In this document: one piece after another, positions 649 to 27,429 of the stretch | How positions within the stretch are numbered: the stretch's first letter is position 1 | Layout: each line of letters begins with the position of its first letter | Assembly: GCF_006345805.1 (NCBI RefSeq) | Contig: NW_021832319.1 | Coordinates: forward strand, 1 to 28,045 | Direction: 5' to 3' | Length of the DNA stretch: 28,045 nt | Source of the DNA: Octopus sinensis | Lineage: Eukaryota | Made by a program: the position numbers and the translations under genes | The notes under the pieces: generated by a model | Told to the model about the DNA's origin: nothing | Databases searched by the model: none | Seen by the model: only the letters and a program-made list of their open reading frames with translations

Positions 649-843
649 ATGAACCCATCTCATATCGAATCGTTTCCAACATTCCAATGCTTAATTTGCT
701 TAACCAATAACACTCGCAAGAAGGCGAGAAAGTGCTTTGACTGTAAGAGAAATGTCCACCTATCTTGTGTCGGCTTAACTAAGTTATCATCTACAGCCCT
801 CGCAATCTGGAAATGTCAAGCGTGTCACTGTATTAGATGTTAA
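649..843 (+). pseudogene. PHD-finger (C4HC3) fragment, probably transposon-derived (retrotransposon N-terminus)
   Basis: CLIC..CFDCKRNVHLSC..WKCQAC has PHD spacing. It starts right at the hAT end and is followed by another TE fragment. Confidence 0.6.
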
Positions 844-4660: not shown

Positions 4661-4999
4661 ATAAGTTTTTTTTTAATTTAAAGATGTTTAGAGAATTTGG
4701 GCTGATGTGTGATTAATTCTCTTTGGGATATGAACATCTGACCATTAAAAGACATTTTCCAAGTTTATTCGTTTAATTTTATGTAAGATAAACAAACAGG
4801 CTAAAGTATAATCGGGCACTATCCATATTCTAGCTTTATTCGTTTATAAGTAAATATAGTAGCAGGAGTAAAGGAATCTCCTTTTGTATAATTCAATCAT
4901 GTTATCAAAATTGGTAAAAAAAATAGTCGAGTTTATGTAATTTTTTGATTTTTGTCAGAAGTTGCTGAATTTTTTAGTTGATTGAGCGAAAATAAAATT

Positions 5000-5617
5000 T
5001 TTAATAGTAAAAATTATCATTTTATTAAATAATAAACTTATGATTAAGTTAAAATCTGGTGTACCTCCCTATATTAAACAATAAAATCTTAACCAATAAC
5101 ACTGATATTTTCAAACACATTTTTATATTCAAATTCAATAATATTTTTCACCATTTTACTATCACTTTATATTCATTTAAATTACACTGATTTTAAGGAC
5201 TTTAGTCCAGCAAATGCGTCTTTTTGAATTTCTGAAATATGATTTCTGATTAAAATTCTTAAATATTTTTATCTTTTTACATTTCCTGCAGATTCTTCAA
5301 ATTTTTCAATCCAAAAGGTTGAAACAATTTTACATTGGAGCTAAGAATCAGCCTGATTTAAATTAAGTTATCACAAAAACATTTTAATAACTTTTTGACA
5401 GTCTTTAAAAAATGTTGAATTTATGGCCACAATTCGAGAATTTTGAATCAAACTTAATTACTTTAAAAATATAAAACATTTGTTTTGTGTCTTCTCTGCA
5501 TTTGATTGAATTTTGTTTATCAGAGGCGGGAAACGAGCAAACAAGTGAATGGGAGATGTCCCAACAGGCACGTGTACTTGTTATTTGAATAATATGTATA
5601 AAAATAATATAAATCAT
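5000..5617 (-). CDS. Signal peptide + LRR protein (LGR-ectodomain-like), paralog 1; 3' end unresolved
   Basis: Signal peptide and Cys cap (MIYIIFIHIIQITSTRA-CWDISHSLVCSF). GT-AG phase-2 introns at 5453-5477 (25 nt), 5353-5380 (28), 5258-5280 (23) and 5165-5185 (21) delimit three exact 72-nt LRR exons: LIQNSRIVAINSTFFKDCQKVIKM, LILSSNVKLFQPFGLKNLKNLQEI, ILIRNHISEIQKDAFAGLKSLKSV. A fifth intron at 5069-5093 follows a 71-nt exon. Confidence 0.78.
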
Positions 5618-6549
5618 TAATTAATAGTCTAATTAATTGTTATATATTTTTAAAATGTAGCAGATACTAAATAATTATAAATAATTACCAAGTAACAGAT
5701 TGCGTTGTTAATTATATTTAGATTTTTTTTTAATTTTTAATGTTATCTTTATAATTATTTTTTTATATACTGGTTAACCTTTTTAAAATACTGGGACCTT
5801 AACAACATGTTGGTTTTTATGTTCTCTGCAGTAGGTCAACGTCTCATCAGATGGTTCTATGTATAAAATAGCCTGAAGTACTGCAGAGCATGTTGATTGG
5901 CCAACTCGGTTCTTGTCTTTGAGAACAAAAACCTTTTCGAAGATTCGGAAATGCTAGAAATCACGTTTCACGACAATTTTTGCCTTCCAATAACTTAAAA
6001 GACTGTTTGAGACAGTCTTTATTCACCAACAGTCTTAGACGATGCCGTTTATTTCTATAGATTTTAGAACTGTCCATATCATTGGGAATGGCCTGTTTAT
6101 TCGACAAAGCTATTCGATTTATTGACTGTTGTAAGAAAGCCACTTTTGTCAAATAGGTCAGTGTGATTGAGGTAGGGAGGAGTTGAGGAGGTACTGATCG
6201 GAAAAATCTAGGAACTCCCCCAAACAAATAATTAAGTCTCCAGGAAATAAAAAAATCAATTTTTATATTATTAAATAGAATGGCTAAACATTTGTAAGTA
6301 TTGAAACATTCCCTGATTTAGTTTGTTTTGTCTGACTCCCTATTTGTCGTCCCAAAAACGTGTGTTTTTAAATGTTAGAACATATTAAAGGGGCAATTAT
6401 TATAAATATTTGTATTAGTTTTTCTAAATCATTATCCCGTGCTTTTCTATTAATTCGAAATTAAATTGTTTTGTGTGTACCTAAACAAAAGATTTTCTGA
6501 TAATATTAAAAAATATTTGTTAATTGTATTTAATATTTATGAATGTCTG

Positions 6550-7280
6550 ATAAATTATGAAAATCGGCTTATGATTAATCAAATATTTACAAAAAATTCG
6601 AAAATGTTTGAAAGGCCTATTAGCATCAAAGTATCACAATTGATAGCGAAATCAGGAAAATTTCATACTATTGGGGAGTTTTTAATATTACCAGCTGTCA
6701 AAGAAGTGTTATGATTGTGATTCTGAACAGATATTTTAATCAATTTCTTTGAGTAATAGTTCAGTCTCTTTCAGAATTGATGAAATGGCATCTGATATTT
6801 AACCTTATGTGCATTTTTAAGAACAACAAAATTTTCGATTCAAATTGATGAATCGACATTTACAGATACTGTTTCACTTTATTAATTTACGTACGTTATA
6901 TTAATCAAATAATTTAATCGAAAAAGAATTTTTATCTTCTGAACACCTTGGACTCAAAACAAGAGGGGTTAACAATTTTTGAAACTGTTGAACAATATTT
7001 GTGGAGACATGAATTACTCCTTATCAATATTATTACTTGTTCAACAGATGGAGCACCTGCGATGGTTAAAGTTCATCGTGGGTTTTTGGGATATATGAAG
7101 GAGAAAGTACCAAATATTTTTAACAATCCATTGCGTCATTCACAGACAGCATTTAGCAGCAAAAAATTTAGGTGAAGGACTAAAAGAATTATTAAATGTA
7201 GTTATCTGTGCAATAAATCGTGTTAAAATGCATCCGAGAATATTTCAACTTATATGTAAACAAAACGATGAGCATTATGA
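6550..7280 (+). mobile_element. Degraded hAT (Buster/Charlie, ZBED5/SCAND3-like) transposase
   Basis: Motifs KSGKFHTIGEFLILPAVKE, SLSNSSVSFRIDEMA, FSIQIDEST, CSTDGAPAM and HCVIHRQHL. True in-frame stops and several shifts; no TIR seen. Confidence 0.88.
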
Positions 7281-7905
7281 ACTGAGCAAGCTGTGGACAG
7301 TAGAGATGAGTGTCTCCTAATGTAGAGGATTGGAGAAATGTAGTGGTTTTCAATTCATTCACACAAACGTATTTGAAACGAATATAAAATTATCATACTT
7401 GTAATATCACATTAAATGCAGAGCTTTTCCAAAACACTTTATCTTCAGAATATTCTACTCTATTTTCTCAGAACTAAAGATATAGTTTTATCCTAATATG
7501 ACGTTCTTGTCTGTCCTTCAGGTAGACTATATATGCAATGAGCCCCAATGGGACTATACTCAATACTTACTGATATTGAATTCCTAAGCAGTGTGTGGCA
7601 ACAGATACTATTTAATAAAATTTTGATAAATATCGGGAAAAGATCGGATCGGCAAACATCAAAAAAAATATTCCCAAGCGTCATCCTAGAAGCAGTTGAC
7701 TACAGATAAGCCTGTAGAGAGTTATAAACACAACTGTCATTCCATGGTACATCAGCATAGCTCGTTACGCATTTTTGCCTCAGAAAATGTTAATGAAATG
7801 ACTGAAAAACAACTGAATCAGTTCAAACATTAATTAAATTCCAGTAAAATATACTTTTTTGGTTGGGTTATAGTTTTATATTTTTTGTGTTGAATTTAGG
7901 AAGGA

Positions 7906-8075
7906 TCAAGCCACCTCCTCAATTCCATAATCAAGTTTTAAAAATGGCCTTGGAATTTCATAAAGATTTTTGAAGTCTTTGCTCACTCTAACGGCCATTC
8001 CTGAGTACAAAGTGCTTCCACCCGAAAAGACTACGTTGGAGTAGAGATTCTTTCAAATACTGGTCATCCAAATAA
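7906..8075 (-). pseudogene. Actin/actin-related protein fragment
   Basis: I*KNLYSNVVFSGGSTLYSGMAVRVSKDF vs the actin motif [29 protein letters not shown]. In-frame TGA; no flanking actin sequence found. Confidence 0.7.
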
Positions 8076-8329
8076 TACAAATTGGCCATTACCAACGATC
8101 GAGACTATACACCTAATTAAACAATCAAACTTAAATGAATGATTAAAAACATGTTTAATAAAATTTTGAAATATATTTGTTGTTATTTATTGGTTCGTAT
8201 TTTCTTTTACAATATATCGAGGAATGGCAATTGGTGATGTTTACAGTCTCGAAAAATTACATTTTCTATAAATCGACTTTTTTAATGTATTTCAATTTAT
8301 AAGTTTTTCACAAATTTCATCTGAAGTTA

Positions 8330-8860
8330 CAAATTATTTTTATGTTAATCTTTTAATGTACAATCCCGTTTCATTGCAGTTAAAAATATTTTCAATGCCA
8401 TAGTTATTAAAATAGTCATCGTACTTATCAAAAAAATTCCAAGGCAAGAAATAGCACACGATTTTTTTCACTTTGTATTATTTCAAATGACAAATTGTGT
8501 CTTTTCTTAAATTTTCAAGCCAACCATTCGAACCTCTGAATGAGGTATAGTTCAAATTCCTACCTACTTTTATAGCAACGTTTTTAAAAATAGGTCCTAA
8601 AACGGAAATTTTGCTTTTAAGAAGCATTCATAAACAATTTTATCAAATTTCTGCGACAGACTGTCTCTTATCTGTGAAATTTGACTAAGACGATATGATT
8701 GTACGGACCCATTATTTAAAGAGTTCTTGTTATTTTGTTTAATTCTAAATACTGCTCTCAAACAATAGAATTATCAGATAACCTTTACTAGTTTTATATT
8801 TTTTGACAATATCTCGTTCGCTCATGAAACAATTTTGGGACAATTTTAAGCTTTAACTCC
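8330..8860 (-). mobile_element. Tigger/pogo (CENP-B-like) transposase remnant
   Basis: SERDIVKKYKTSKG (HTH), GPIFKNVAIKVG..FRGSNGWLEN / KRHNLSF (CENP-B HTH) and YGIENIFNCNETGL (DDE start), colinear but disrupted. Confidence 0.75.
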
Positions 8861-9329
8861 AGAATAAGCTTTCTTCCCGTGACATCAAAACGCAAATCTA
8901 GCAAGCAAAGTTTGAGAAAAATTTATATAATTAAACTTAATATTAATTCCAAGACTTTATATAAATTAAATTCAGTGTGTAGAATAAGTGGTGGCCCGAC
9001 ATAATAAAGAATTCTTTGGAATAAATTTGTGATTTCTGCAGAAGATTTGGTCAACGACAGTTCAAGCATTACATATTTTGAAAAAGAATCCCCAATTACC
9101 GAAATCTATTTTAAAAGAATATTTTCTGAGGTCAATTAAATCCGCAATGTATCAGTCCCTAAATCTTCATCAATGATTGGCGTAATTAGGGGCTTCGTAG
9201 ACAATATTTTTTTCGACTAAGAATATTTACTAAAATGAGTTATTACCTGACAGAAAGCACAAAACGAAATCACCTTAGATATTTCTTCTTTGAATGAATG
9301 AATGAATTTTTTATTAAAACGGAAAAGCC

Positions 9330-9700
9330 GGAAAAAAGAGAGAGAAAGTTAATGAGACAACGTATGCCTCTTCTCCGTTGTTTCCCTCTTTTTTTATGTT
9401 TAATTAGAGATTCGAGAGATTCCAACTCTTGAAGGATGGGTTGGTCCAGCTGGAGTCCATTTGCCAATTTGATGGCATATCGTCTCGTCTTTTCGAGCTT
9501 TGCGATAATGCCATCCCTCTCAGCAGTAGGGTACCATAATGGTTCGACGCACGTTTTATAAACATATAAAAACGTTTCCGGACAAAGGTGGAAGTGAATT
9601 ATGCTCCTGAGAATTTGAGCGCATTTCTTTCTCCTCGAGTCGATGTATTTCTTCTTTATTCAATCCATAATGGAGATTTCCTAATTTTGAAAAAGGCGGT
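9330..9700 (-). mobile_element. CR1/L2-like LINE reverse-transcriptase C-terminal remnant
   Basis: TFLYVYKTCVEPLWYP...IIAKLEKTRRYAIKLANGL...LESL resembles the LYKxxVRP..W.P..I..LE..QR motif. Confidence 0.5.
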
Positions 9701-10649
9701 TTTTCCCCAAGTGGTTATAGTTATGTTTTACCTAACTTTAATTTATTAAGTTGCACCTCAACACACCCAAGCTTTAATTCGAATTCATCTTCACAGAAAA
9801 AACATAATTTTAGCCCATTTTTTAGAAAATATGTTTTTTTCATTTTCAAAATCAAAAGTCATTCCCAATTTCGTATTTGAGTAATTCTAGATATTTCGTA
9901 AATATTTTATATGCAATCAAAAATTAAATTATCAAGATAAAATGTTAATTTTTCACAGTCGCAAAAATCGAGCGACTTTTGAGCGATCATTACACCGGAG
10001 GTGTCCACATAAACAGATTTAACGATAAGAATTACTTGTATGCTGCTATTTGGCTTTTAAAACTGATTTGCTAATACTAGGCACATTTGAGGACATTAAA
10101 ATTGTTTTTTTAGTTATAATAAAAAGACACAAAATACATAGATTACAAAAATTGTCGAGGAAATAAATTTTCTCTCAAATTTCAAAGTAAAAATTCATTT
10201 TACAAAAACGTCAATAAAAAATTAAATTTTATTTCCAAAATAATGTCGAAGAACAGGAAATAAAAGATGGCCAATTATTAATGTTCCGTTTTACGCGTCT
10301 CCATTTTCATGTAGTAACTTCAGAGCTCACCTTGGCCGCAAATACGTTGTTTCACTTTGATATCGTCATATTCCGTGAAGATTTATTTGATGAAAGTGTT
10401 AATTAGAGTCTATCAAATTCCCTTTGATAGCTCACAAGTAGAAAATACAAAAATAAACGAATACAGTGTTCATGTTTTCAGTTCACAAGACGTAGATAGT
10501 GGTTGTTGGTATGTGGTTGAAGGCAATGATTTACAAACAAGGAAGTTGTGCAATGACACGGAGTTCTAATAATTTGTTAAAAATGAATTTTGTTATTCGA
10601 CCTGTCATTGTTTTAGCGCCACCATCTCATGTTCATAAACGACATTAAA

Positions 10650-11265
10650 CTGTTCGCTCGGACTTTAGAGATCCTCCACTCGATGGGGAAAGCCTTGGAA
10701 GGTTTTATGAAGGCCGTGGATCTGGAACTCAACTAAAAGTCGGCGACTAACACTCCTGTGTGCGGTGACCTAGTCAAAGTCTTGGAGGAGCACCAAGGGT
10801 ATTAGTCACAAGAAAACCACGTCCACTTCTTTGCAAGCAATCAGGAGAGATTATACTTGTCTCGCGGGCAGCTAGGACATGGACTGAGTAACATCGTACA
10901 CTTAAGTGAGCGAATTCTTACTAAGATGCACGACACCTTGTGGAGTGGGTTAAGTGAATCCCAAAGGAAGGCTGACATCCTTCCTGTTGAAAAAACGCGT
11001 GGTACACAGCGAGGGACCATAAAAGACTACATGTCGGCTAAGTATGGTCTGGGTGCTACCCAAGTTAATGTGAAGGAGTTGATCAATTTTCAGAGGGAAT
11101 CGCTAATAAAAAGATCAACTTAAAAATCATTTACAAGACTCTTTTTAGAAGTCTGGGAAACCCGCACATTGACGTATCGTCGTCATCAACGTGGCTGAAA
11201 TATGGGAATAACTCTCCCCGATCAGAAGGGTTATTCTCATATTTGCAGGATAGAAACTTTTAATG
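10650..11265 (+). mobile_element. R4/Dong-like (RLE-type) non-LTR retrotransposon, RT C-terminal remnant
   Basis: KSATNTPVCGDLVKVLEEHQGY, ERLYLSRGQLGHGLSNIVHLSERIL and SSTWLKYGNNSPRSEGLFSYLQDRNF; internal deletion and stops. Confidence 0.75.
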
Positions 11266-11615
11266 GTCAACAGAAAAAATGGGAATCACTGTAAAAGTAA
11301 GGCGATGAGCGTTTAGCCACGATAAAGAACTTTTAGCTAATGTTGAGAATAAACATGAAGTTTTTCTAATTTCTCAATTAACAAATTACAAAGCAAATAT
11401 TGGAAAATAACAATTAGAAAGCACATTTTATTTTAATTAGACTAAAAGTCATTTTTGTTCATTAAAGCCATTTCTTTAATTATTTATATTCTAAAATTAT
11501 TGATTTGTTTTTTCAAATTGGCCACAAAATTTTAAGGGCCAATTTCTTATTAACATAAGAAGATATCAATTATAATAGATTTTATTTTTATTTAATTAAA
11601 AGTAATTTCTTGAAC

Positions 11616-13457
11616 TTATTTATTCTTCATTTTCGCGATTCCCCAAAAAATCGACACTCGGTCGCGAGTTTCTGATCGATTGTGAGACTTCTACAAATAA
11701 AAGCGAGGCTCAACCATGTGTACAATCACAAAAAACTGCACAAAAATTGATGTAAATAGGGACAAAACGACGTATATAAAAAAAGATATAAACAAGATCT
11801 GATACATGTCCGAAAATAATCTGAAGCGTGAATCCTCCGTTGACATCATAGTATCATTAATTATATCCCCGTTCATTATTGCAAAAAGAGAAATAGCGGA
11901 TGAGTAGAGAGTTTCAAACTAAAAATAATTGACAAAACTAGCCTTTTCATTATAGGGATGAAGAACTATCAACCCACAAAATACAAAGCCCATATACACA
12001 ATGATTATGCAGGACATGAAACGGAGGACCAAGAGGGTCGACCTAGTCAGAGTCATCATCAGGATCTTAAAATTATTTAAGCATAATATACGTTAAAACC
12101 CGAAAAGAAACTAAGATAGCGAAGGAGACCAGTCCAAATGAGAAGAATGTTAATTCCATAAGCAATCGCGAGATAAGGAGAATAAAATTGCTAAAAAATA
12201 AGCTACAGAAGAACGTGAATTTGAGTAATATAAATTCCAGTGACAACAATATTACTTATGTCAGTGAAAATAATTATGAAATTCCATATGTCGAAGTATA
12301 TTGATAATTCCGAATACGACAAACTTTCTCCCTCTATGCGAGAAAAGTAAGAATTTGTAATCTTGGCCAAATAAATGGATTTTAACACAGAACGGACACA
12401 TGTGATGAGAGATATAAAACTCACCAATAATGCCAACGAAGATACTATAAGGTGCACCGTACGGGTATAATTGAAGACTATGGTTGAGATATGACACTTA
12501 CAAAAATATCCATAAGAACGACGTTGTGCCGAACTATCAATTTTGTAAGCTTCGTTCAAGTTTGATCGAATTATGTTGACCTAAAAAGTAATTAAATAAT
12601 ATTACATTGTATTTAATTTGCTCATTCACGATGTGCTCTGAGTTATTCATCCAAGTTGTTGACATCGACATTAATTCCATTGTAAGACTTATTTTGAAGG
12701 TTCTTTAATATTCACTTTTTATCCTTACTTGGATAATAATACATTGTCAGTAAATTTTGTTATTTTTGAAACGTCAAAAGTAGTCATATTGGACAATATA
12801 TCAATTTCCTCACATACTTGAATTCATTCATAAATTAAATCAACCCCATTTAAAACTGACTTTCAAGAAATTGTTCTCTAAGTCTAATTTTGTGTTTTTA
12901 TCATCGATATGATAATAATTTAGACAAATTAGAACAGGAAAAAGATTGTTCGAGTTCAGTTTTAGGGATTATAACCAATCAATGAGTCGTTTCCAATACT
13001 GATATACTATGAATACTCAATCAAATAGTTTGTCACTTTATTTAATGTGAAATTGATATTATTCAACATTTGAGGTAGGCTCATCACAAATGGCAAATGT
13101 TCATGGCAATAAGACGGATGTTTAACAAAATCTTGGATAAAGTAACGATCAAGCGTTAAAGTCGGAATATTCGCCAGTCGAGATTGACCATAAATATAAA
13201 TCTACAATATTAAATAATTTACTTGAACAGTGAAGATTATACTTTGGCCAGTTGTGCAAACATTTTTATAGGAAGCTTTCGCTTTTCATTCCATTTTCCC
13301 ACCGGATCTTTTAAATAGTATGAAGCATAGGTCTTAAACTCATCAATATCTTCATTTAAACAATTTTTTTCTTCTAATTAGAGATATTGCACGATTAGCT
13401 CACCGCCGGGCAGTCCAATGAATGCTACGTTTTTTTGTGTTTTTTTTGACTTGACAT
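11616..13457 (-). CDS. MCOLN: Mucolipin / TRPML cation channel, 12 exons, ~520 aa after repairing three 1-nt deletions
   Basis: Introns: 13374-13403, 13202-13222, 13007-13036, 12817-12844, 12703-12728, 12581-12605, 12478-12501, 12191-12214, 12066-12091, 11919-11942 (GC-AG), 11691-11714. The spliced product has YYLKDPVGKWNEKRKLPIK, ICLNYYH, ITCVRSVLKS, WTGLLRYLSFFSGFN|ILMMTL, GFVFCGLIVLHPYNEK|FETL, SLFAIMNGD and FISFFIYVVLSLF, all mucolipin hallmarks. Frameshifts near 13443, 13241 and 12966; repaired length is 1563 nt, divisible by 3. Confidence 0.93.
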
Positions 13458-13925
13458 ATTTTTATATTAGTAAGCGACTAATGGAATTTGAATTTTATTA
13501 TAAATAAATTGAATTTAGTTATTTTTATTTTATGTATCTTTTTATTAAAAATTAATCTCATCACTTCAATTTTTGAATTAGATTTTATAAGAAGGTGTAG
13601 AAGAAAAAGCTTTCTCGATGGTCAAATATTCGCCTTTTAAAAAAATATAGTTTTAATAAAAATTCGCCCTTCTATGTGAATGAGAATAGAAAACGAAACC
13701 ACTTGTGAATTTATAACACTCGAGTTATTGTATGGGCGAAGAGTGGATACTGATTGGGGATATGTACTCTAAAAATTTAGCGAAAACAAAAACTTAATTA
13801 TTGATTTATTCAGACGCAACCAATTTGCACCAATTTCATGTGACCTAAATTTTAAATTCCTATTTTTTGGCTGTCAAAAGAAAACCGAGATAGAAAGAAC
13901 AGATGAAGTCTGTTGAGGAATTTCA

Positions 13926-13976
13926 CAAAACAGAAAAATTTACTCAAAACAGAAAAATTTACTCAAAACAGAAAAT
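13926..13976 (+). repeat. Tandem repeat, 19-bp unit x2.6
   Basis: caaaacagaaaaatttact at 13926-13944 and 13945-13963, then partial caaaacagaaaat. Confidence 0.9.
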
Positions 13977-14149
13977 CCCAAATACTGCCGGAGTACATTC
14001 AAAAATTGTCTTTAAAAATAGACTTACGCTGAAACTCAAAAAATCATAGGATTCCCTAGACAGAACTTTAATGAGTGAAAGAATAAATGCCATTTCCAAA
14101 TCACTTTGTTATACGACTTAAATCGGAAAAGAACGTGCTTTGTTAAGAC

Positions 14150-14620
14150 AATCGAATATACTACATCCAAAACATCCCACATTTTAGACAGCTTATAACA
14201 AAGTAACTAGAACTCAAACGAAGGCTGAAGTAATTTGCCTGCAACTTCCGGGAGGATCCCTGTCCAGTCAAGAGGCGACAACCGAACTTGCAACTGTTCT
14301 TGAAGCAAATCCATCTGCCTCCTTACTAGAGCCTCCTTCTGTAACCTACACACGCATATTGAGACCCTGAAAGCAATAAGGACAGCCAAAAATGTGTCCC
14401 CAGAGTATGACAAAATTCCAATGGCCTGTTTCAAGCTGCCGTCTCTACTTACAAACCTTTTCAATTCCAGCCTACAGAGATAATACGTTCCAAAATCATA
14501 AAAAACTGAAGTTCGGATGGTTTGAAAACCTAAAAAACCTAAAGAAAAAGTCTTAAGCTATAGCCCTATAAGCCTAATTTGCTCTACATCAAAGATAAAG
14601 AAGAGTTAAAACTTTTAGAA
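14150..14620 (+). mobile_element. Jockey/I-like LINE RT N-terminal remnant, copy 1
   Basis: AIRTAKNVSPEYDKIP..LLTNLFNSSL..KPKKPKEKVLSYSPISL matches SPGxD..LFN..KP.K..SYRPISL; alignable at DNA level to 27435-27665. Confidence 0.7.
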
Positions 14621-14640
14621 TCATTATCGTTAATGACAAT

Positions 14641-14811
14641 TTTTTTTTTTTTTTGGAAGCAAGAAAGAAATTAAAGATAGCTAAGTTAATTAAAGGCCTC
14701 ACGAGACACCCGACCAGCCTCGCGAATGGCGAAGCCGTTCCCTCGGATCACTGCAATCGACAGACGTTCCAGGAGCCAAGAAAACTCTCTTGGATCGTGA
14801 CTAGTCCTTGA
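14641..14811 (-). mobile_element. 5'-truncated CRE-clade retrotransposon 3' end with poly(A) tail and TSD
   Basis: Reverse strand encodes SRTSHDPREFSWLLERLSIAVIRGNGFAIREAGRVSREAFN*, then a short UTR and an A15 tail (T-run 14640-14654). Flanked by aatgacaat at 14632-14640 and 14812-14820. Confidence 0.88.
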
Positions 14812-14925
14812 AATGACAATTATGACACACTTAAAAAAAGCTATTAATGCATTGAAAGACAATTTTTCAAATGCTTTACTTCGCGATATATTTACCGGTT
14901 TCCCTTTTTTACTAACAATTTAGAT

Positions 14926-17113
14926 CAGAGGTTTCCAAATGGGGAGGCGCGCCTCCCTAGGGAGGCGTTGACTCGTGTCAAGGGAGGCGCGAAAAGTATT
15001 TCAGAAACATTTTTTAGAAAATTATATCTATGTAAAAAACGTGACTATATTCCGATAATAAGAGTTATTAATTTAAAAATTATATTTTTCAAAAATTTAT
15101 TTAATTTATTAGACAATTAAATAATTTTAACACATGAATAAATTCTTGAGTGGTTGCAAAAGAAAATTCACGAATAATAAAGATTTTGACGATGGTTCAA
15201 AAAATCAAAATGATTGGAATATAATCAATACCACTCCAAAGACAAGAAAATACTTTCCATCTTACTTATTGTTAGGATTCACACGTATCTTTGTTGATTC
15301 TATGGAAAAACCCCTCTGTTGCTTTGCCTCAAAACACTTGCAGCAGATAGTATGAGGCCATGCAAATTAAGAAGACATTTTGAAACGATGCATTCTGAAC
15401 ATGTCCATAAGTCTGAAGAATTTTTTAAAAGAAAATTAGAAGAGTTTGATAACCAAACGAAATCGTTAAAAATACTTGTTTCTGTCTCTTCAAATGCTTT
15501 ACTAGCATCGTACAAAGTTTCTTACAGGATTGCAAAATGCAAGAAACCGCACAATATCGGAGAAACTCTAGTTTTGCCAGCAGCTATCGATATGGTTGAA
15601 GCAATGTTTGGCGAATCCTATGCAAAACAATTACAGCAAATACCGCTTGCTGATAACACAGTCGCTAGAAGAATTGATGACATATCTGAAGATCTTTGTG
15701 ATCAGTTGGTTTCTCGACTACGTAACTGTAAATTGCTATACAAGTTGATGAGGGAGCTGACATAAATAAAAATGCACATTTAATTGCATATGTCAGATAT
15801 GCTGAAGAAAGTACAATAATAGAAGATCTATTATTCTGCAAACCATTTCCTGGAAGGAGCACGGCCAATGAAATTTTTATATAATTGATACTTTTTTGAA
15901 GAAAATAACATAGAATGGATCAATGTGTTGGACTTTGTACAGACGGAGCACAGTCAATGTCAGGAAATAAATCTGGTCTTCAAGCTCTTGTAAAAAACAG
16001 AGCACCAGAAATTATCTGGACGCACTGCATGCTGCACAGATCAGCACTTGTCTCAAAGAATATGAGTCCAGAACTGAACGATATTTTGCGCAAATTACAA
16101 AAGTTATAAACTACATAAAACACAGTCCTTTAAGAGCTAAGCTTTTTGCAAAGCTGTGTGAAGATATGGATTCAAAATATACATCGCTTTTATACTATTG
16201 TGAGGTACGCTGGCTATCTCGTGCAAAAGTGATTAGAAGGGTGTTTGAACTCAAAGATCAAGTTGCAGATTTTCTTGATGAAAATGATATTGAAGATGCA
16301 AAGTTGTTCAGGGATGATGACTTTATTGTCAAATTTGCCTATTTAGTTGACATTTTTGGGAAATTGAGTATATTGAATAAATCAATGCAGGGACCACAAC
16401 TACATTTATTCTCTCAAAAGGACAAAATAAAAGCATTTATGAAAAAATTGGTATTATGGAAATCAAATATACAAAAAAATATCTATGACATGTTTCCACT
16501 TTTAAACACCTTTTGCGCCATAGTGAACATTGAAGCAAACAAAGACATATTTGCTGAACATTTGGATTGTTTGTTGAAGCATTTTGCTCACTATTTTAAA
16601 GATCTCGACTGTAAAATGTTCGAATGGATACAGAATCCATTTATTGATGAAGAAGATAATCAATTTGCATTGACAACTTTTGAAAAAGAAAAATTGATAG
16701 AATTGTCATGCGATACATTATTGAAACAAAAATTGAGAGAGAACCGCTAATTTCTTTTTGGTTGAATGTAAGAACGGAATATGAAATTTTGTCGAATAAA
16801 GCAATGAAAGTTTTGTTGCCATTTGCTACTTCATATTTATGCGAAACTGGATTTTCTGCACTAGCTGCAATAAATCTAAATATCGAACTTGTTTAGTAGT
16901 GACTAATGAGCTAAGAGTAGCACTCTCTGCGATGACACCAAGATTTGAAAAACTTTGCGCCAAGATGGAAAAAAAATTATCTCATTAACTTTTTGTTTTA
17001 AAAATTGTTTTTGATAAAATAATAATTGTATTATATTATGGAATATAAAGGGAGGCGCAAGATTGTACTTTTTCTCTAAGGGAGGCGCGTAAAAAAAAGC
17101 TTGGAAACCTCTG
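14926..17113 (+). mobile_element. Full-length Buster-subfamily hAT DNA transposon (2188 bp)
   Basis: TIRs cagaggtttccaa (14926) and ttggaaacctctg (ends 17113). Perfect 8-bp TSD atttagat (14918-14925, 17114-17121) with central TA. Subterminal gggaggcg repeats at both ends. Confidence 0.96.
15134..16988 (+). CDS. Buster hAT transposase (BED finger + DDE), ~620 aa after repairing eight 1-nt deletions
   Basis: BED finger CLLC..LRRHFETMH; catalytic IQVDE, CTDGA and LCETGFS; CxxH motif HCMLH. No in-frame stops after repair; (1855+8)/3 = 621 codons. Confidence 0.9.
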
Positions 17114-17349
17114 ATTTAGATGATGACGATGGCAAGAAAATCTGAATTTTCGGATTCAGCATTGCCATCGAGTTATCGAGGCACATGGATGTTTTTGACA
17201 ATCTGATCTAAAAAAAATAATAAAAGTATGTAGTATTTTTAATTTGCAAGTTTTCTATTTAACTTAAAGTACAAAATTAATAACAGATTGTCAGAGAAGC
17301 ATTCAGAAATTGTTTTAAGAATTGGTCCCTGCATGTTAATGAAGAAAAG

Positions 17350-17720
17350 ACCGAACATATAAGAACCGCAAAGGAATTAATACTAGCCAGTGCAAGAAAA
17401 TGCACAAAATATGGAGTCTACCAAAGTTAATCAAAACAAAAGTACGAATAAGGTTATAAAACTTGTATATAATGCTGGTACTTGTGTACATCTCGAGTAC
17501 ATGGGGAGTCACTAAGTTAGAACTCAAGAAAATGGACACATTTAATCGAAAACTATTACACAATTTACTCGGCCTAGAAGGTCTTTAACAAGAAATTGTA
17601 TTCTATGATACAATCGGTTCCAATAAGTACTGATATTGTCGAATCGAGATGGAGGCTATTTGGTCATGTACTTAGAATGGATATAAACACTCCCGCAAAC
17701 ATTATAACGATTCCAAGCAG
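17350..17720 (+). mobile_element. RTE-clade LINE C-terminal remnant
   Basis: KIWSLPKLIKTKVRIRL..VYISSTWGVTKLELKKMDTFNRKLL and PISTDIVESRWRLFGHVLRMD. Confidence 0.75.
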
Positions 17721-18399
17721 ACCTTATAAAATATTTAAAATGAAATGTAAACTTCCATAATGGAGCTATTTTAATATGGCCTTGCAACGGGGCTGTGAGT
17801 ATACTGACAACACAGATCAAGGCAACAGTGAACAAAGCTACCAAATACAATTAAACGTGGCAATTTTAAGAAGTTTTAGTTAAAACATTTTTGCAGATAT
17901 TTGAAATTAAACAGCAATTTTAGTTTGCAATTTTTCGGACTATATTGGTTTGATATAAAATAACTTCACTGAATGGAAAAAAGATGGATGTAAACTTTAA
18001 TTCAATAGTTCACGTCATTCTCTCTGTGATAATATGGACGGACTGCTCAGAAATTGCAAAAAAATGACTAATCATGAAAGAATCATTTTTTTCGGATTTA
18101 AATATGGTTCTTGTTTTAGTTTTTGATTAGTTTTTCTTATTTGTTAACAATACTCTCATTATTATATTTGTTTAGCATGGAATTAGTTTGGATCAAAAAA
18201 CGTGTTTCTATGCTATTTGAAGTTAATCTTTTAATAGTGACAATATTATAAGACGAATAGCTTATCAGGTCACTACATGTTTAGTGAACCGCTTGTTTTC
18301 ATTTTTTCATACAAATTTCTGGCAAAGGAGCAAAATTTTAAAACGAAAAATGATTTCTTATAATCCAAGTTTCTGAAAAATTATCGCCCTTTTTTAGTT

Positions 18400-18703
18400 C
18401 TAAATTTGGTCATCAGTCACAAATTCGCAGATTGATGTCATAAATTTCAGACTATGATTGGATATGACTATTAGATGTGTAAGTTCAAGTGACCCTTCTA
18501 TTTTTGAGCAGCCTTGGTAGAGCTTTCTATAATATTCGAGACGGTCTATTCCCCGAAAACTCGATAGCCCATTGGTAATAAAATAAAACACTGCCTCTTG
18601 GATAATAGAATTTACTTTTACTGTTTGCTTCTGAAATGAGCAAAGACAAGAGTAAAGGTGTAATTGTAAAAATATAACTAAGCAGAGTAGAAAACTAATT
18701 CAT
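18400..18703 (-). pseudogene. EGFR/ERBB-like signal peptide + receptor L-domain fragment
   Basis: ATG at 18703, TAG at codon 3, hydrophobic leader, 25-nt intron (18591-18615), then TNGLSSFRGIDRLEYYRKLYQGCSKIEGSLELTHL..SLKFMTSICE, resembling ERBB2 LYQGCQVVQGNLELTYL..SLSFLQDIQE. No intact continuation found. Confidence 0.68.
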
Positions 18704-19284
18704 ATATACTTATACTTCAATTTGACAAAATTCCTATAAAACTTACGGCCGATCATAAAATTAGTGACTCGGGGTCAGATAATTAGCTACATATTGAAAA
18801 ATGTCAATAATCAATTTCATTTTAAATTGTTTAATTTATAGGCAATATTTTTATAAACTTGAAATTAATCTGATAATTCATACTTATTCCACAAAACATC
18901 CCATTTTGTGGTCCAAATGCACTTTTAAATTGTACTTTGGACATATTCAAGTGTCTTTGTCATTAAGAAATTGGTTCAATTAGTTAATCAAACGGCCATA
19001 ATTATATTTCCATATCTTTTGAATATTCTAAAAGATTATTTATATCACTCCTAGAGACCAATAAGCTTTAATTGTTCACAATTTGTATTAATTATGAGCT
19101 TACTAATTATCTAGAATCATTCAATTTTATTTTTTGAAAATCAGCTGAGAACAAGAAGGAAGTGTCAAAATTCAGTTGAGAAAGTCACAGTTTAGTACGG
19201 AGAGGATTTGAATCATAAAACGAAATAATGGAATATTGCAAGAAGATTCGTAGTCTTTACAGCGGTTTTTCTAAGTTATATAGT

Positions 19285-19600
19285 GTTTTCAGAGCTTTAA
19301 CATCGAAAGTGCAAGCATTAGTGTTGACACATCAAGCAAAGTGTTAATGCAACCAGCATTAGTGTCGAAGGTTTAAAAAATCGAAATTTTATTCATTAAT
19401 TTTTTACTTTCTGTTTGGCAAAGGAAACATATTTGAGCATTTTTCGATGAAAAGAGTCATAATGTTCGATCGTTATTTCATTCATCTTTTCACATATAAC
19501 ATTTTTCAACTCTATTTCGCTGTTGAAGCCATGTGCTTCATAGACCTCGGTATTAAAGAAAAATGACAAAAATTCATGCATAGTTGATTCCACTCCACCA
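19285..19600 (-). mobile_element. Tc1/IS630-like transposase C-terminal remnant plus terminal repeat region
   Basis: NSEIELKNVICEKMNEITIEHYDSFHRKMLKYV resembles Tc1 C-termini. 19285-19368 carries cattagtg direct repeats shared in inverted orientation with 23405-23486. Confidence 0.5.
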
Positions 19601-19624
19601 AACAAGAATTCAGCAACTAAAGGC

Positions 19625-20250
19625 AATCAATACTCTTTGCAATCGTTTTTTGGCAACATTATCCCGTTTACGCGTGACTTATTCTTCTTTGCCAACTTCA
19701 CTGGCTTAAGGAAAACCGATGGATGAGTTTGCCCCATCGCTGTTGGCATTACTTTAGGACGCTATCTGCTAAGATTGTTTGCAGGCTTGTCTATTCTGAT
19801 CTTGAGCCATTTTTCGAGCCTGTTCAACTTGGAGTTTCTGTTAGGAACGGATGTGAGGCTGTTGCTCATGCCTCAAGATATTATATAACCAGTGCTTCAG
19901 CTGCTTCTTGCTCTGAAAGAGGACTCCTCAAACTCGATATAAAAAACGCCTTCGGCTACATCTGTCGGAACCACTTCCTTCAAGTTTATAACGACAATTA
20001 TCATATTTTGTACCTCTTAGCTCTCACTGTGCAAAATCTGAATTAGTTAGCCTCAACCTTGTTAATGAACGCTTTGGCCATCTACTATCGTCCTTCCGCA
20101 CTAGCCTTGGTCAAGTACAGACGACTGATATCAACGATCTCCGGATTCTCGGATCCCCCATTCTTTCAACCGGTATAAAGACTAATCTTCGTATTAAACA
20201 TTCGACACTCATTCGTTTGTTGGATTGCTTTACAACTTTGGACAGCCACA
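19625..20250 (+). mobile_element. CRE-clade retrotransposon RT remnant
   Basis: FANFTGLRKTDG*VCPIAVGITL, LSAKIVC, PVQLGVSVRNGCEAVAHA, LKLDIKNAF and LRILGSPI; frameshifts, a stop and deletions. Confidence 0.85.
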
Positions 20251-20329
20251 TCAATGAAAAGTACTGTCGAAGAAGATTGTAGTTAAATTCGACGATCGAA
20301 AGCTTGTAGAGTAAAACGTTTCTACAAAA

Positions 20330-20721
20330 GATAACAAAAGAGAAACCACCAATAACGTAGACCGCATAGTCCATGTGCAGTCTGGAGCGTAAGAATCTGT
20401 TCTCGTTACGGGTCATTATCGATCAAGTAACGCAGATGACCTATGATCACCTGGATTTTTTACGAAAAGTTCTTTATTTCAAAATCTGTGGCAAAGTTGA
20501 ATGTCGGGAATCCGCAACTAAGTTTGATCGAAGGACCCACACAAGCTTACAATCAGTCAGTGATTATCCGAAAAACACTGGAGAGTATTTATACAGAAAA
20601 TAAGTTTAGAATGATCCCGCCGAGAGAACGCCAAAAGTCGCGGTTTACAAATATAACAACGGAGAAAGCTTTGCCGAGTGTGCCTATTGAGTCAAACTTG
20701 AGATTAAAAACTTTATCCTAA
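20330..20721 (+). mobile_element. R4/Dong-like retrotransposon RLE C-terminal remnant
   Basis: MITW....QAYNQSVIIRKTLESI matches the terminal ITW..AYIQSxVxxKTLESI motif; same family type as 10650-11265. Confidence 0.65.
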
Positions 20722-21164
20722 CCATTTTGTTTAAAAAATTGAAATGACTTAAAAAATTTGTTTAAAAATCTAAAAAGTTGACATAATTGACCAAAAAACT
20801 TTATAGAAACTTTTTTTAGCATTTTTATAAATTAATCAAGGCAGTAATAGACATTAATTGAAAAATAATTTTATTTGGATTTTTATTTTTCAATTTTTGT
20901 GAAAAATTGAATGTAATACTTTTCTAAAAGAAAGTAAAGCATCTAATGAATTGTCCAAAAAATGTATTTAAGAATGCAGCTTAATTCTATTCAAAATAAT
21001 AAATTTTATGTTCGATGATACTTTTTAGACTTCGAGAGACTTTTATAAAATTTTTACAGAATTTAATTTGTCTGGTAAAACCAACACTGCTAAAATAGCA
21101 AGTAATAGTTGAAATTAATTAAGACCAAAAAAGGAAAATAAAATTAAAGTTAACGTAGAATCGG

Positions 21165-21981
21165 TCATGAATCATCAATTTCCACATATCCAGTTATGCA
21201 TAGAATATTATATGGCTCCATGAGGTCGCATTTATCGCAGGCTATTGATAATTAAGTAAGACATACAATATGTTTCAGACAATGTAAGAGTTTTTATTGA
21301 ACGCCATTTACTTCTCAGTATAACATCTGTAGTATCAAAATATAGATAAGAATCCTTCATTGTAACCCTATATAAGAAAGTCTCTGAATACATTGTATAC
21401 TCTTCCAACTCGCCATTGTATATGCATATCTTGTTCGATGAAGACATGCTAAACAATGATTGACTAAAATACCGAATAGATGTCTTGGTCTTAAAATTAG
21501 GTTGTTTAAAAATGGAGTTCTGTGGCATTATTCTTTAAAATTAAAAATGATTATTACATTGTTTTTAAAAGGGTGAGATCTGAGAAAGCATCGACGTCAA
21601 TAAAATTCAAATTATCACAATATTTCAGATCGCTAATGATTATAAGTGTTTAGATGTACATTTCAAGCAATTTAGGCAAATTGTCAAAAGAATGTGCCCA
21701 TATTTCGTAAAATGAACTGGATTGACACTGACTATTATTAATATAAAACTTTTCAGTACAAGATTGCTGCATCTCTAAATTCAAACTCGGAATTCCATTT
21801 TGGTGGGGAATTCAGTATTTTTATAGTTCGTGGATTATCACCCCGTTCGAATAATGAATAATAGCAGTCACAGTTAAAACTAACACAAATTAATATTCAT
21901 AAAAAACTCTCCAATTTGGCTTAAATTATTTGCAGTTAAATTATTTATTAAAATTAGAGCAATAAGATAAAATCCGAGCAT
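21165..21981 (-). CDS. Signal peptide + LRR protein (glycoprotein-hormone-receptor/LGR ectodomain-like), paralog 2
   Basis: Leader MLGFYLIALILINNLTA. Phase-2 introns at 21880-21907, 21732-21759, 21633-21659 and 21533-21557; candidate introns at 21449-21472, 21368-21391 and 21242-21266. A 72-nt exon (QCQSSSFYEIWAHSFDNLPKLLEI) and a 75-nt exon (DLKYCDNLNFIDVDAFSDLTLLKTI) resemble TSHR exons (..ESHSFYNLSKVTHI / [25 protein letters not shown]). Stop at 21165-21167; no 7TM domain seen. Confidence 0.8.
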
Positions 21982-22429: not shown

Positions 22430-23490
22430 TTTATGAATTGGTTATACTGACTATTTGTGTTATTTTTATGATGGTGTGATAGATGATGTTTATTTTATTT
22501 TGTTTGAGAATAATGTTCTGGTTAAGAATGACACTAATAAAGTCGAATGTTAAACATAATGAAAAACCACAAGACTGAAATATAACTGAAAAAATCTTTG
22601 CCGTGAACACAGAACGCATGATATTTGGTTTGACTTCTCTCGCTAGTTTCAATACACGTTTTTTCTGACGACTCACAAAACTGGAGAACGTTTCTATGGG
22701 GTATTGTAACTCTATTTCGCTGCGGAAATTACAAGACGTTTCCATTCAAAGAATATACGAATTATAAAGGAAAGTATTGTAGTAAATATTTAATATTAAA
22801 ATTTGGAATGACTTCAGTAATTCTTTATAATGGTGTATCGAGAATTATCTATTATAAATAATGGACCTGTCTCTCTTTTTTTCGCAAACTGAAAATCCTA
22901 CTTTATCCAGAAAAATGATGTTCTTATCTTCGATTTCAATTTGTAAGCGTCGAAAATTACTTGCATATTTTTTTCAAGTTCAATGGTAGCATTACATTTT
23001 GCCTCACTGGTATTTTCACAATTTGTTTCACTGTGTAGTGAAAGTCTTTAAGACATCTGTTAATAGTACTCGGACTGATATTTATCCGATATTCAGAAAA
23101 CAGCATGTCTTTTAGTTTTGATAGTGTGAATAATGGATTATCATCGACGCATTAAGAATTTATTGCTTGTATAAATCATTCAATTTGGAAAAATATTGCT
23201 CTCAATATCTCTGGATTTTCTCCATTGACAAAGTATTCGGCTTATGAAGGATTGAGACATATTTATATAGTCACTTATTTCTTTGTTAGATTTTCTATTA
23301 ACTGAAAGTTCAGTTTTTTGGTTGAAAAAGATTTTTTGTCCATATATAGCTCTCACTCTAACATAGAATTTTCCGAAAACCGTTAATTCTTGCTTATATG
23401 CGAAAATTAGCACTAATGTTTGGTGCATTAACACTAAAGCTTGCGCTTTTAACGCTGTTGGCCTCAAGAATAGCTCTGAAACATGCAATT
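22430..23490 (-). mobile_element. Degraded Tc1/IS630-like transposon
   Basis: HTH RKSNKEISDYINMSQSFISRILCQW; DDE region FIIDN / IHH..IKYLLQYFPL (degenerate KYLPPYSP); C-terminal NFRSEIEL similar to the 19396-19600 copy. Confidence 0.55.
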
Positions 23491-27392: not shown

Positions 27393-27429
27393 TTTATCAC
27401 TTTTGCTTGAACTAAATGAAATTTGCGTT

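What the first reader, a model, noticed from the sequence alone, without database searches (positions are those of the whole stretch)
5000..21981. Dispersed set of ectodomain-only, receptor-like genes (2 LGR-like LRR + 1 EGFR-like)
Seen: three minus-strand loci each begin with a signal peptide followed by the ligand-binding ectodomain of a metazoan receptor family. None shows the expected 7TM or kinase part nearby. Inference: this could be an expanded family of secreted or surface decoy or host-ligand-binding proteins in a parasite, diversified by modular phase-2 LRR exons. It could also be truncated duplicates scattered by TE activity. This is the best candidate for an undescribed system in the window.
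Basis: partly seen in the sequence, partly recalled or inferred. Interest (0 to 1): 0.7.

Follow-up and report, generated by a model that had tools for sequence, protein, structure and literature searches.

The report
Truncated receptor gene heads among transposons
Three short minus-strand loci keep only the first few exons of two LRR-type hormone receptors and an EGF-receptor-like gene in a transposon-rich stretch of a parasite genome with 21–28-base introns. They look like leftover gene fragments, not a decoy-receptor system.

Summary
The sequence observation holds; the "system" reading does not.

**What is there.** With 21–32-nt GT..AG introns spliced out, three minus-strand loci each start with ATG and a signal-peptide-like segment.
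- **Locus A (21981–21165)** best matches TSH, LH and FSH receptors at the same residue numbers (E 2.6e-4).
- **Locus C (5617–4955)** best matches LGR5 and LGR4 (E 1e-12).
- **Locus B (18756–18400)** has about 40 residues like the start of ErbB2 domain I (E 2.5e-3).

**What is missing.** No 7TM, hinge, cysteine-rich, further L-domain or kinase sequence was found anywhere in the window.

**Why they are probably fragments.**
- Each is only the front of an ectodomain: 3–4 recognisable LRRs in A, about 6 of 14–18 in C, and about a quarter of L1 in B.
- A and C show no similarity to each other, so this is not an expanded family.
- The phase-2 72/75-nt LRR exons, from my own knowledge, are the ancestral LGR gene structure, not diversification.
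- The region is full of transposons, including a hAT with an intact target-site duplication, and also holds an isolated 32-codon actin fragment.
- A complete mucolipin gene between B and C spans only about 1.8 kb, so missing 3' exons should have been close by.

**Verdict.** Most likely these are 5' remnants of three unrelated receptor genes. Secreted function for A or C is possible but untested. Interest is low to moderate.

The parts
21165..21981 (-). Locus A, a glycoprotein-hormone-receptor-like (type-A LGR-like) head. It is a 227-codon model of 6 exons: 21981–21908, 21879–21760, 21731–21660, 21632–21558, 21532–21267 and 21241–21165 including the stop. The introns are 28, 28, 27, 25 and 25 nt, and the first four are phase 2.
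   Evidence: - Spliced model.
- Best PDB matches are TSHR, LHCGR and FSHR. Query residues 71–117 align to TSHR 67–113 (E 2.6e-4).
- Pfam LRR_8 at 3.1e-5 (24.1 bits, below the 27-bit cut-off).
- Residues of about 128–227 have no relative among 1.84 billion representative proteins.
18400..18756 (-). Locus B, an ErbB/EGFR-like stub. Exon 1 is 18756–18716, followed by a 21-nt intron, then exon 2 at 18694–18421. The ErbB-like stretch is about 18543–18424. Homology stops at a GT ('ICEF|GTGACT'), and read-through reaches a stop at 18402–18400.
   Evidence: - PDB phmmer aligns query residues 65–104 to ErbB2 22–59 (E 2.5e-3). The top 27 rows are ErbB2, then LET-23.
- Pfam Recep_L_domain gave no hit.
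- No further L-domain, furin-like or kinase exon was found downstream.
4955..5617 (-). Locus C, an LGR4/5-like (type-B LGR-like) head. It is a 179-codon model of 6 exons: 5617–5478, 5452–5375, 5352–5281, 5257–5186, 5164–5101 and 5068–4955 including the stop. The introns are 25, 22, 23, 21 and 32 nt. Exons 2–4 are 78, 72 and 72 nt and phase 2. The exon 5/6 junction is uncertain: the typical 25-nt intron there would break the frame.
   Evidence: - Model.
- PDB: LGR5 at 1.2e-12, then LGR4, TLR13, LRIG1 and RXFP1.
- Pfam LRR_8 at 3.4e-6.
- No donor site after exon 6 and no LRR, hinge or 7TM downstream.
11616..13377 (-). Mucolipin (TRPML) gene lying between B and C. It looks complete and compact, with 24–26-nt introns, and serves as the internal control for how a normal gene looks in this genome. 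The 5' limit is approximate.
   Evidence: PDB phmmer gives E 8e-34 to TRPML1, covering residues 244–521, plus a weak match to the pre-TM1 segment at 40–76. Intron list.
7963..8058 (-). Isolated actin-like fragment of 32 codons, preceded by an in-frame stop, with no other actin sequence nearby. It counts as gene debris.
   Evidence: - Pfam Actin at 1.2e-4, profile positions 323–352 of 410.
14918..17121 (+). hAT-type DNA transposon at 14926–17113. It has 13-nt perfect terminal inverted repeats (CAGAGGTTTCCAA) and an 8-bp target-site duplication (ATTTAGAT) on both sides. It is inserted in an older retroelement.
   Evidence: - Inverted repeat I3, with the sequence read directly.
- Transposase-like ORFs at 15134–16896.
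- The hAT assignment of the ORF rests on my own recognition of motifs; Pfam gave no hit.
19228..20721 (+). Reverse-transcriptase-like retroelement piece between loci A and B, on the opposite strand. One segment repeats at 996–1076.
   Evidence: Repeat 996–1076 against 19932–20012 at 78% identity. The RT assignment is by eye only, with no Pfam hit.

Best explanation
The three loci are the 5' remnants ("heads") of three unrelated ancestral receptor genes: a glycoprotein-hormone-receptor-type LGR (A), an LGR4/5/6-type LGR (C) and an ErbB-type receptor (B).

**Setting.** They lie in a transposon-churned region of an animal genome with ultra-short introns. In the literature that trait is reported only for myxobolid myxozoans and a dicyemid, both parasites.

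**What each keeps.** Each has its start codon, a signal-peptide-like segment and the first two to six exons. The original intron positions are preserved as 21–32-nt introns.

**What each has lost.** The rest of the gene is absent from the locus: the remaining LRRs, hinge and 7TM for A and C, and the rest of L1, the cysteine-rich domains, the TM segment and the kinase for B. The reading frames then run into a stop.

**Shown.** The homology, the intron structure, the absence of downstream parts in the window, the transposon context, and other gene debris alongside.

**Inferred.**
- The truncation came from transposon insertion, from rearrangement, or from duplication of gene fragments.
- B is non-functional, because it is too short to fold as an L domain.
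- A and C are at best short secreted LRR proteins of unknown function, and more probably decaying relics.
For: 1. **Homology is specific and positionally right but partial.** A aligns to TSHR, LHCGR and FSHR at the same residue numbers. C aligns to LGR5 and LGR4. B aligns to the first 38 residues of ErbB2 domain I.
2. **The tiny introns match those of the neighbouring mucolipin gene.** They run 21–28 nt with one uncertain 32-nt junction in C, start GTA, GTT or GTG, end AG, and have 12–26% GC. In A and C they fall between LRR units in phase 2 with 72/75/78-nt exons.
3. **Nothing follows.** Pfam scans of the minus-strand frames (all of the window except 14931–16901, within and next to the hAT element, and the mucolipin gene body), and of spliced candidates downstream of each locus, gave no 7tm_1, Recep_L_domain, Furin-like or Pkinase. 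tblastn probes hit only the three heads. The best spliced path from each ATG ends at the stated stops even with introns up to 60 nt allowed.
4. **Normal genes here are compact.** Mucolipin covers TRPML1 residues 40–521 within about 1.8 kb. PMC13644364 reports that introns of 30 bp or less are flanked by significantly shorter neighbouring introns than longer introns are.
5. **The region is rich in transposons and holds other fragments.** These include a hAT with intact TIRs and target-site duplication, repeated retroelement pieces, a Tc1-like HTH, a 32-codon actin fragment and a half HIG1 domain.
6. **A and C are not paralogs**.
8. **The second half of A has no real relative** among 1.84 billion representative proteins.
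Against: - A is an uninterrupted 227-codon model with five intact GT..AG introns and a 100-codon exon. Its score of 207 exceeds all six shuffled or reversed controls (maximum 201). A long-dead pseudogene would not look like this, so A is either recently truncated or still coding.
- The LRRs of C are close to consensus.
- All three fragments are heads with a start codon and a signal-like segment, and all host genes in the window lie on the minus strand. Random breakage does not predict this.
- Raw-frame Pfam scanning is insensitive to short exons: it recovered only 1 of about 9 known LRR exons. A 7TM region split into many small exons could therefore be missed, although the spliced-path search argues against that.
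- No transcript data, no sister genome and no second copy were available.
Confidence: 0.55

Rival explanations
1. A and C, but not B, are working genes for short secreted LRR proteins. They derive from LGR ectodomains that lost their membrane part, and may bind host or endogenous ligands as decoys or adhesion-type proteins.
For: - A has an intact 227-codon spliced ORF with five correct tiny introns, and scores above all shuffled controls.
- C has near-consensus LRRs, with E 1e-12 to LGR5.
- Both start with hydrophobic signal-like segments and end at stops without a TM segment. These features were read from the sequence.
- No 7TM was found downstream.
Against: - The ectodomains are incomplete: 3–4 recognisable LRRs in A and about 6 in C. 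Neither has a C-terminal cap or hinge.
- The N-terminal cysteine caps are degenerate.
- The exon 5/6 junction in C needs an atypical 32-nt intron to stay in frame.
- No relatives of either protein were found: word-indexed searches of A and C gave nothing, and the exhaustive search of A's 100-codon exon gave nothing real. There is therefore no sign of a conserved family.
- C's ORF score of 159 is within chance.
- Identity to vertebrate receptors is only about 30–36% in the HMMER and tblastn alignments. The loci are therefore not host-derived mimics.
Confidence: 0.2
2. The loci are the first exons of full-length receptor genes. Their remaining exons would lie far downstream, beyond long transposon-filled introns or outside the window.
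For: - Usable GT donors exist before the stops: 'ICEF|GTGACT' in B and 'GY|GTGGAA' in A, read.
- Transposons lie immediately downstream of A and B.
- Raw-frame scans are insensitive to short exons.
Against: - The next same-strand coding sequences after A are another gene start (B), then a complete mucolipin gene, then C. Introns would have to be over 15 kb and contain other same-strand genes.
- This is a genome whose introns here are 21–32 nt. PMC13644364 also reports that introns of 30 bp or less are flanked by shorter neighbouring introns.
- No 7TM or kinase was found anywhere in the 28 kb on either strand.
- Exon 6 of C has no GT donor before its stop.
Confidence: 0.1
3. The heads are gene fragments captured and moved by a transposon, for example Helitron-type or other DNA-level capture. 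Such capture is known to collect promoters and first exons of several genes in one orientation.
For: - All three are 5' fragments with introns retained, so they are DNA-level copies, not retrocopies.
- All are on one strand.
- They are interspersed with transposons and other gene fragments.
- That Helitrons capture first exons is my own knowledge and was not tested here.
Against: - No Helitron Rep or helicase, or other capturing-element protein, was seen among the ORFs and spliced models of either strand or in the minus-strand Pfam scans. Plus-strand frames were not scanned with Pfam.
- No shared flanking repeats link A, B and C.
- The complete mucolipin gene in the middle is not a fragment.
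- Transposon ends cannot be defined without other copies.
Confidence: 0.1
4. Locus B is a chance resemblance in AT-rich sequence and not a receptor remnant at all.
For: - Only about 40 residues match, at E 2.5e-3 against a small database.
- There was no Pfam hit at the loosest setting requested (max E 10; HMMER's filters drop most matches above about 0.1).
- The ORF score of 125 is within the null range.
- tblastn gives E 1.8.
Against: - The top 27 PDB rows are all ErbB2, followed by LET-23.
- All align to the very start of domain I, at the right distance after a signal-like segment.
- The conserved 'YQGC..(V/I).G.LE(L/I)T' core is present.
- From my memory of the human EGFR gene, the match ends at a GT that coincides with the exon 2/3 boundary.
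Confidence: 0.08

Closest known systems
[quoted passage not shown]
   Same: - Locus A has an N-terminal signal-like segment, a C-x-C cap remnant and LRR2–LRR3 at the same residue positions as TSHR.
- Its 72- and 75-nt LRR exons are separated by phase-2 introns. From my own knowledge this is also the pattern in vertebrate and sea-anemone receptor genes.
   Different: - Only 3–4 recognisable LRRs instead of 7–9.
- Two of the four cap cysteines are missing.
- No cysteine-rich hinge and no 7TM.
- The C-terminal 100 residues have no recognisable relative.
Type-B LGRs (LGR4, LGR5, LGR6)
   Same: - Locus C gives its best matches to the LGR5 and LGR4 ectodomains (E 1e-12 to 1e-9).
- It has canonical 24-residue LRRs on 72-nt phase-2 exons.
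   Different: - About 6 LRRs instead of 14–18 (definition in PMC9545775).
- No C-terminal cap, hinge or 7TM.
- The similarity is spread over many LRRs of LGR5 and is not one-to-one. Subtype assignment is therefore weaker than for A.
ErbB/EGFR family (ErbB2, C. elegans LET-23)
   Same: Locus B has a signal-like segment followed by the first 40 or so residues of ligand-binding domain I, including the conserved 'YQGC…G.LE.T' stretch.
   Different: There is no remainder of L1, and no furin-like cysteine-rich domain, L2, TM segment or kinase.
Naturally truncated soluble receptor isoforms and decoy receptors (from my own knowledge, for example secreted ErbB or gonadotropin-receptor splice variants)
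   Same: A signal peptide plus an N-terminal ectodomain part, ending in a stop without a membrane anchor.
   Different: Known soluble forms are products of full-length receptor genes and keep a foldable ligand-binding unit. Here no full-length gene is present at the locus and the domains are incomplete. Neither expression nor binding is known.
Gene fragments and unprocessed pseudogenes in transposon-rich DNA
   Same: - Partial genes with introns retained, lying between transposon insertions.
- Accompanied by other fragments: actin and a half HIG1 domain.
   Different: - A is still a clean ORF across five introns.
- All three are 5' ends.
- No parent copies could be examined.

Membership tests
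LGR (leucine-rich-repeat-containing GPCR), any type | Rhodopsin-type seven-transmembrane domain C-terminal to the LRR ectodomain | tested here: not met
   - No 7tm_1 hit on any scanned minus-strand frame or on spliced downstream candidates.
- tblastn with the 7TM parts of FSHR and LGR5 gave only noise.
- Sensitivity for very short exons is limited.
LGR (any type) | Cysteine-rich hinge between the LRRs and the 7TM | tested here: not met
   The C-terminus of A gave no receptor match. C ends inside an LRR-like exon.
LGR type A | About 7–9 LRRs after an N-terminal cysteine-rich cap (PMC9545775) | tested here: not met
   A has clear homology for LRR2–LRR4 only, at residues of about 65–127.
LGR type B | About 14–18 LRRs (PMC9545775) | tested here: not met
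   C has about 6 LRR units within 179 residues.
LGR genes (gene structure) | One LRR per exon of about 72 nt, separated by phase-2 introns (my own knowledge of vertebrate and sea-anemone receptor genes) | tested here: met
   A exons 3–4 are 72 and 75 nt, and introns 1–4 are all phase 2. C exons 2–4 are 78, 72 and 72 nt and phase 2.
ErbB/EGFR receptor tyrosine kinases | Complete L1 (Recep_L_domain) followed by a furin-like cysteine-rich domain and L2 | tested here: not met
   Only about 40 residues of L1 match. Pfam Recep_L_domain and Furin-like are absent in B and downstream of it.
ErbB/EGFR receptor tyrosine kinases | Transmembrane segment and tyrosine-kinase domain | tested here: not met
   No Pkinase or PK_Tyr hit on the minus-strand frames scanned. 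The tblastn kinase probe was negative on both strands.
Secreted decoy or soluble receptor | Cleavable signal peptide; a foldable ligand-binding unit; evidence of expression, secretion or binding | not testable with these tools
   - Signal-like segments were judged by eye only.
- No transcript or protein data were available.
Unprocessed pseudogene or gene fragment | Partial gene with introns retained, lacking essential parts, without evidence of constraint | tested here: inconclusive
   - Partial structure and retained introns are shown.
- No disabling mutation lies inside A.
- There is a possible frame problem at the exon 5/6 junction of C.
- Constraint cannot be measured without a second sequence.

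The most novel reading that the evidence does not exclude
A parasite with ultra-short introns has discarded the signalling halves of a glycoprotein-hormone-type LGR and an LGR4/5-type receptor. It keeps only short secreted LRR heads (A and C), which it uses to bind host or its own hormone-like ligands. That would be a case of receptors turned into soluble binders by gene truncation.
Probability: 0.1. Interest if true: 0.7.

Novelty: new member of a known kind. Interest (0 to 1): 0.3.

Why it matters
- **If these are relics.** They are a small, concrete example of how receptor genes decay in a reduced, transposon-rich parasite genome. Heads survive with their ancestral intron positions shrunk to 21–28 nt. 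They also warn annotators that such heads can pass as "secreted LRR proteins".
- **If A or C is expressed and secreted.** They would be candidates for parasite proteins derived from hormone-receptor ectodomains, which would interest people working on host–parasite signalling.
- **Either way.** The conserved phase-2 intron positions of LGR genes preserved as 25–28-nt introns support, on independent genes, the recent report that animal introns below 30 nt are real (PMC13644364).

Tried and rejected
1. **Raw six-frame Pfam scans.** They found neither the LRR exons of A nor Recep_L in B. They are insensitive to 24-codon exons, so spliced models were needed.
2. **Spliced-ORF search with introns of 20–60 nt.** It was not discriminating, because shuffled sequence gave longer ORFs. 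Restricted to 20–32 nt, it leaves only mucolipin, the hAT and A above the null range.
3. **Word-indexed protein searches.** A and C gave no hits. Mucolipin gave only 33–37% relatives. Neither the source genome nor a close relative is in that collection, so the synteny test could not be done.
4. **Exact-product look-ups of two window ORFs.** Neither is on record.
5. **Exhaustive HMMER search.** Run on A's 100-codon exon, it returned one repetitive fibronectin-III protein whose score is summed over five repeats. I judged this spurious.
6. **Metagenome scan for A's exon.** It returned one locus sharing a 10-residue word inside what looks like an unrelated membrane protein. I rejected it.
7. **A hinge resemblance I noticed by eye.** The 'CDLMEPYNIL' end of A looked like the receptor hinge, and two stretches downstream looked like a decayed TM1. 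No search supports this, and AT-rich DNA translates into TM-like strings by chance.
8. **GC by codon position.** It does not separate coding from non-coding sequence in this genome.
9. **Host contamination or recent transfer from the host.** I rejected this. The loci carry the genome's own tiny introns, and identity to vertebrate receptors is only about 30–36% in the and 36 alignments.
10. **Transposon protein domains.** Pfam did not recognise them. Transposon calls other than the hAT ends, the Tc1 HTH and the internal repeats rest on my own reading.

Full report
**Nature of the window**

The window is AT-rich at about 32% GC. It has no long bacterial-type ORFs, no tRNA and no Rfam match. Reading the minus strand showed that coding pieces are joined by extremely short GT..AG introns.

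A dynamic-programming search for spliced ORFs recovered a mucolipin gene with 24–26-nt introns. Homology confirmed it: E 8e-34 to human TRPML1 over residues 244–521, plus the conserved pre-TM1 segment.

Introns below 30 nt are reported in animals only for myxobolid myxozoans and for the dicyemid Dicyema japonicum.
- Henneguya salminicola has 29% GC and a median intron of 27 nt. Splice signals in these groups are reduced to 'GTa…AG' (PMC13644364).
- D. japonicum has 36.7% GC and 49% repeats (PMC6736024).

The window fits such a parasite. I could not tell which one. Protein searches found no close relative even for mucolipin, and exact-product look-ups failed.

**Locus A (21981–21165, minus strand)**

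Removing five introns of 28, 28, 27, 25 and 25 nt gives a 227-codon ORF. Each intron starts GTA or GTT, ends AG and has 12–26% GC, like the mucolipin introns.

[quoted passage not shown] Residues 71–117 align to TSHR 67–113, so LRR2–LRR3 sit at the same distance from the N-terminus (E 2.6e-4).
- Pfam LRR_8 scores 3e-5, which is below its 27-bit gathering cut-off.
- Exons 3 and 4 are 72 and 75 nt, and introns 1–4 are phase 2. From my own knowledge, this is the classic structure of glycoprotein-hormone-receptor genes.

Recognisable homology stops at about residue 127.
- The 100-codon fifth exon has no real relative among 1.84 billion representative proteins. The single hit is a repetitive fibronectin-III protein whose score is summed over five repeats.
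- The C-terminus gave no hinge match.

**Locus C (5617–4955, minus strand)**

Five introns of 25, 22, 23, 21 and 32 nt give a 179-codon ORF. It comprises a signal-like segment, a three-cysteine cap and about six LRRs. Exons 2–4 are 78, 72 and 72 nt and phase 2.

- Best matches are LGR5 (1.2e-12) and LGR4, ahead of TLR13, LRIG1 and RXFP1.
- The exon 5/6 junction only stays in frame with an atypical 32-nt intron. The typical 25-nt one would shift the frame.
- Exon 6 has no donor before its stop.
- C's ORF score of 159 lies within the range of shuffled controls, 122–201.

**Locus B (18756–18400, minus strand)**

B has a start codon, a 21-nt intron, a signal-like segment and then about 40 residues that align to ErbB2 domain I residues 22–59 (E 2.5e-3). 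The top 27 PDB rows are ErbB2, followed by LET-23.

- Pfam gave no Recep_L_domain hit.
- Homology ends at 'ICEF|GTGACT'. From memory, this coincides with the EGFR exon 2/3 boundary.
- No further ErbB-like exon follows. That holds even after mentally excising the nested hAT and retroelement between B and mucolipin.

**Absence of the signalling parts**

- Pfam scans of the minus-strand frames found no 7tm_1, Pkinase, Furin-like or further L-domain. They covered the window except 14931–16901 (within and next to the hAT element) and the mucolipin gene body.
- The regions just downstream of each locus were also negative, as were spliced candidate ORFs in those regions.
- tblastn with human FSHR, LGR5 and EGFR hit only the three heads, on both strands.

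*Limits.* Raw-frame scans recovered only one of about nine known LRR exons. A finely split 7TM could therefore be missed. The scans did detect a 32-codon actin piece and a 23-residue HIG1 piece, so a kinase fragment would probably have been seen. In addition, the best spliced path from each ATG ends at the stated stops even with introns up to 60 nt allowed.

**Context**

The loci are separated by transposon material.
- A hAT element at 14926–17113 has perfect 13-nt terminal inverted repeats and an 8-bp target-site duplication. It is inserted in an older retroelement that has a second copy at 27.1–27.7 kb.
- An RT-like piece lies between A and B and repeats near 1 kb.
- A Tc1-like HTH is present.
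- By eye only, there are also pogo-like and older hAT pieces.

Other host-gene debris is present.
- An isolated actin-like fragment of 32 codons at 8058–7963 is preceded by a stop.
- A 37-codon ORF matches only the second half of the HIG1 domain.

By contrast, the intact mucolipin gene spans only about 1.8 kb.

**Interpretation**

A and C are not similar to each other, and they point to different LGR subtypes. B is unrelated to both. There is therefore no expanded family. The phase-2 exon modules are inherited gene structure.

Each locus holds only the front of an ectodomain. B is far too short to fold as an L domain.

In a genome where genes are compact and short introns cluster (PMC13644364), missing downstream exons would be expected within a kilobase or two. 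They are not there.

The best reading is that these are 5' remnants of three receptor genes in a transposon-churned region (confidence about 0.55).

A's clean ORF across five introns scores 207 against a null maximum of 201. A is therefore either recently truncated or still coding. A secreted-LRR-protein role for A, and less so for C, remains possible (about 0.2).

Other readings are less likely but not excluded.
- Distant 3' exons beyond very long introns: about 0.1.
- Transposon capture of first exons: about 0.1.
- For B alone, chance resemblance: about 0.08.

**Membership**

By the definition of LGRs in PMC9545775, A and C fail on 7TM, hinge and repeat number. That definition requires a cysteine cap, 7–9 or 14–18 LRRs, a cysteine-rich hinge and a 7TM domain. 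A and C are LGR-derived, not LGRs. B fails every ErbB criterion except the first 40 residues of L1.

**Verdict**

The "undescribed system" reading is not supported. Transcript data and a whole-assembly search would settle the rest.

Noticed in passing
window 11616-13377 (-): A complete-looking mucolipin (TRPML) gene with 24–26-nt introns. One junction near 11943–11919 keeps 'PYNEK|FETLY' aligned to TRPML1 'PYHVKFRSL' only if a 24-nt intron starting with GC is removed, or an in-frame TAG is read through.
   Followed up: partly
window 14918-17121 (+): - hAT-type transposon with 13-nt perfect TIRs (CAGAGGTTTCCAA) and an intact 8-bp target-site duplication (ATTTAGAT), so the insertion is apparently recent.
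- Its transposase reading frame is joined only if 23–26-nt introns are removed, at 15318–15343, 15722–15744 and 16103–16125.
- It sits inside an older retroelement ORF that reads across the empty site.
   Followed up: partly
window 7963-8058 (-): An isolated actin-like fragment of 32 codons, 50% identical to actin residues 289–320. It is preceded by an in-frame stop, with no other actin sequence nearby.
   Followed up: yes
window 3678-3791 (-): A 37-codon ORF (MSRGNQKLSQSMMKTRVV…) matching only the second half of the HIG_1_N domain (profile positions 23–45 of 52, E 1.6e-5). It is either a small gene with an unrecognised upstream exon or another fragment.
   Followed up: no
window 649-843 (+), 996-1076 (+) and 19932-20012 (+): A PHD-finger-like ORF (E 4e-4) lies next to an RT-like segment that repeats at 78% identity between loci A and B. 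It is probably part of a retroelement family.
   Followed up: no
window 14398-14838 and 27246-27660: Two diverged copies (about 77% DNA identity) of a retroelement tail. The conserved ORF end ('…REFSWLLERLSIAVIRGN…') is inverted relative to the adjacent repeated non-coding segment between the two copies.
   Followed up: no
window ~23000-23150 (-), 8343-8627 (-), 6622-6711 (+): - A weak Tc1-type transposase HTH (Pfam E 0.06).
- Pogo-like ORF pieces, by eye only.
- An older hAT fragment, 53% identical at protein level to the intact element.
- Together with the other elements, these make the 28 kb mostly transposon-derived.
   Followed up: no
all tiny introns of A, B, C and mucolipin: Introns of 21–28 nt start GTA, GTT or GTG, end AG and have 12–29% GC. 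LGR intron positions and phases conserved with vertebrate genes are preserved. This is independent support for real sub-30-nt introns in an animal genome.
   Followed up: partly
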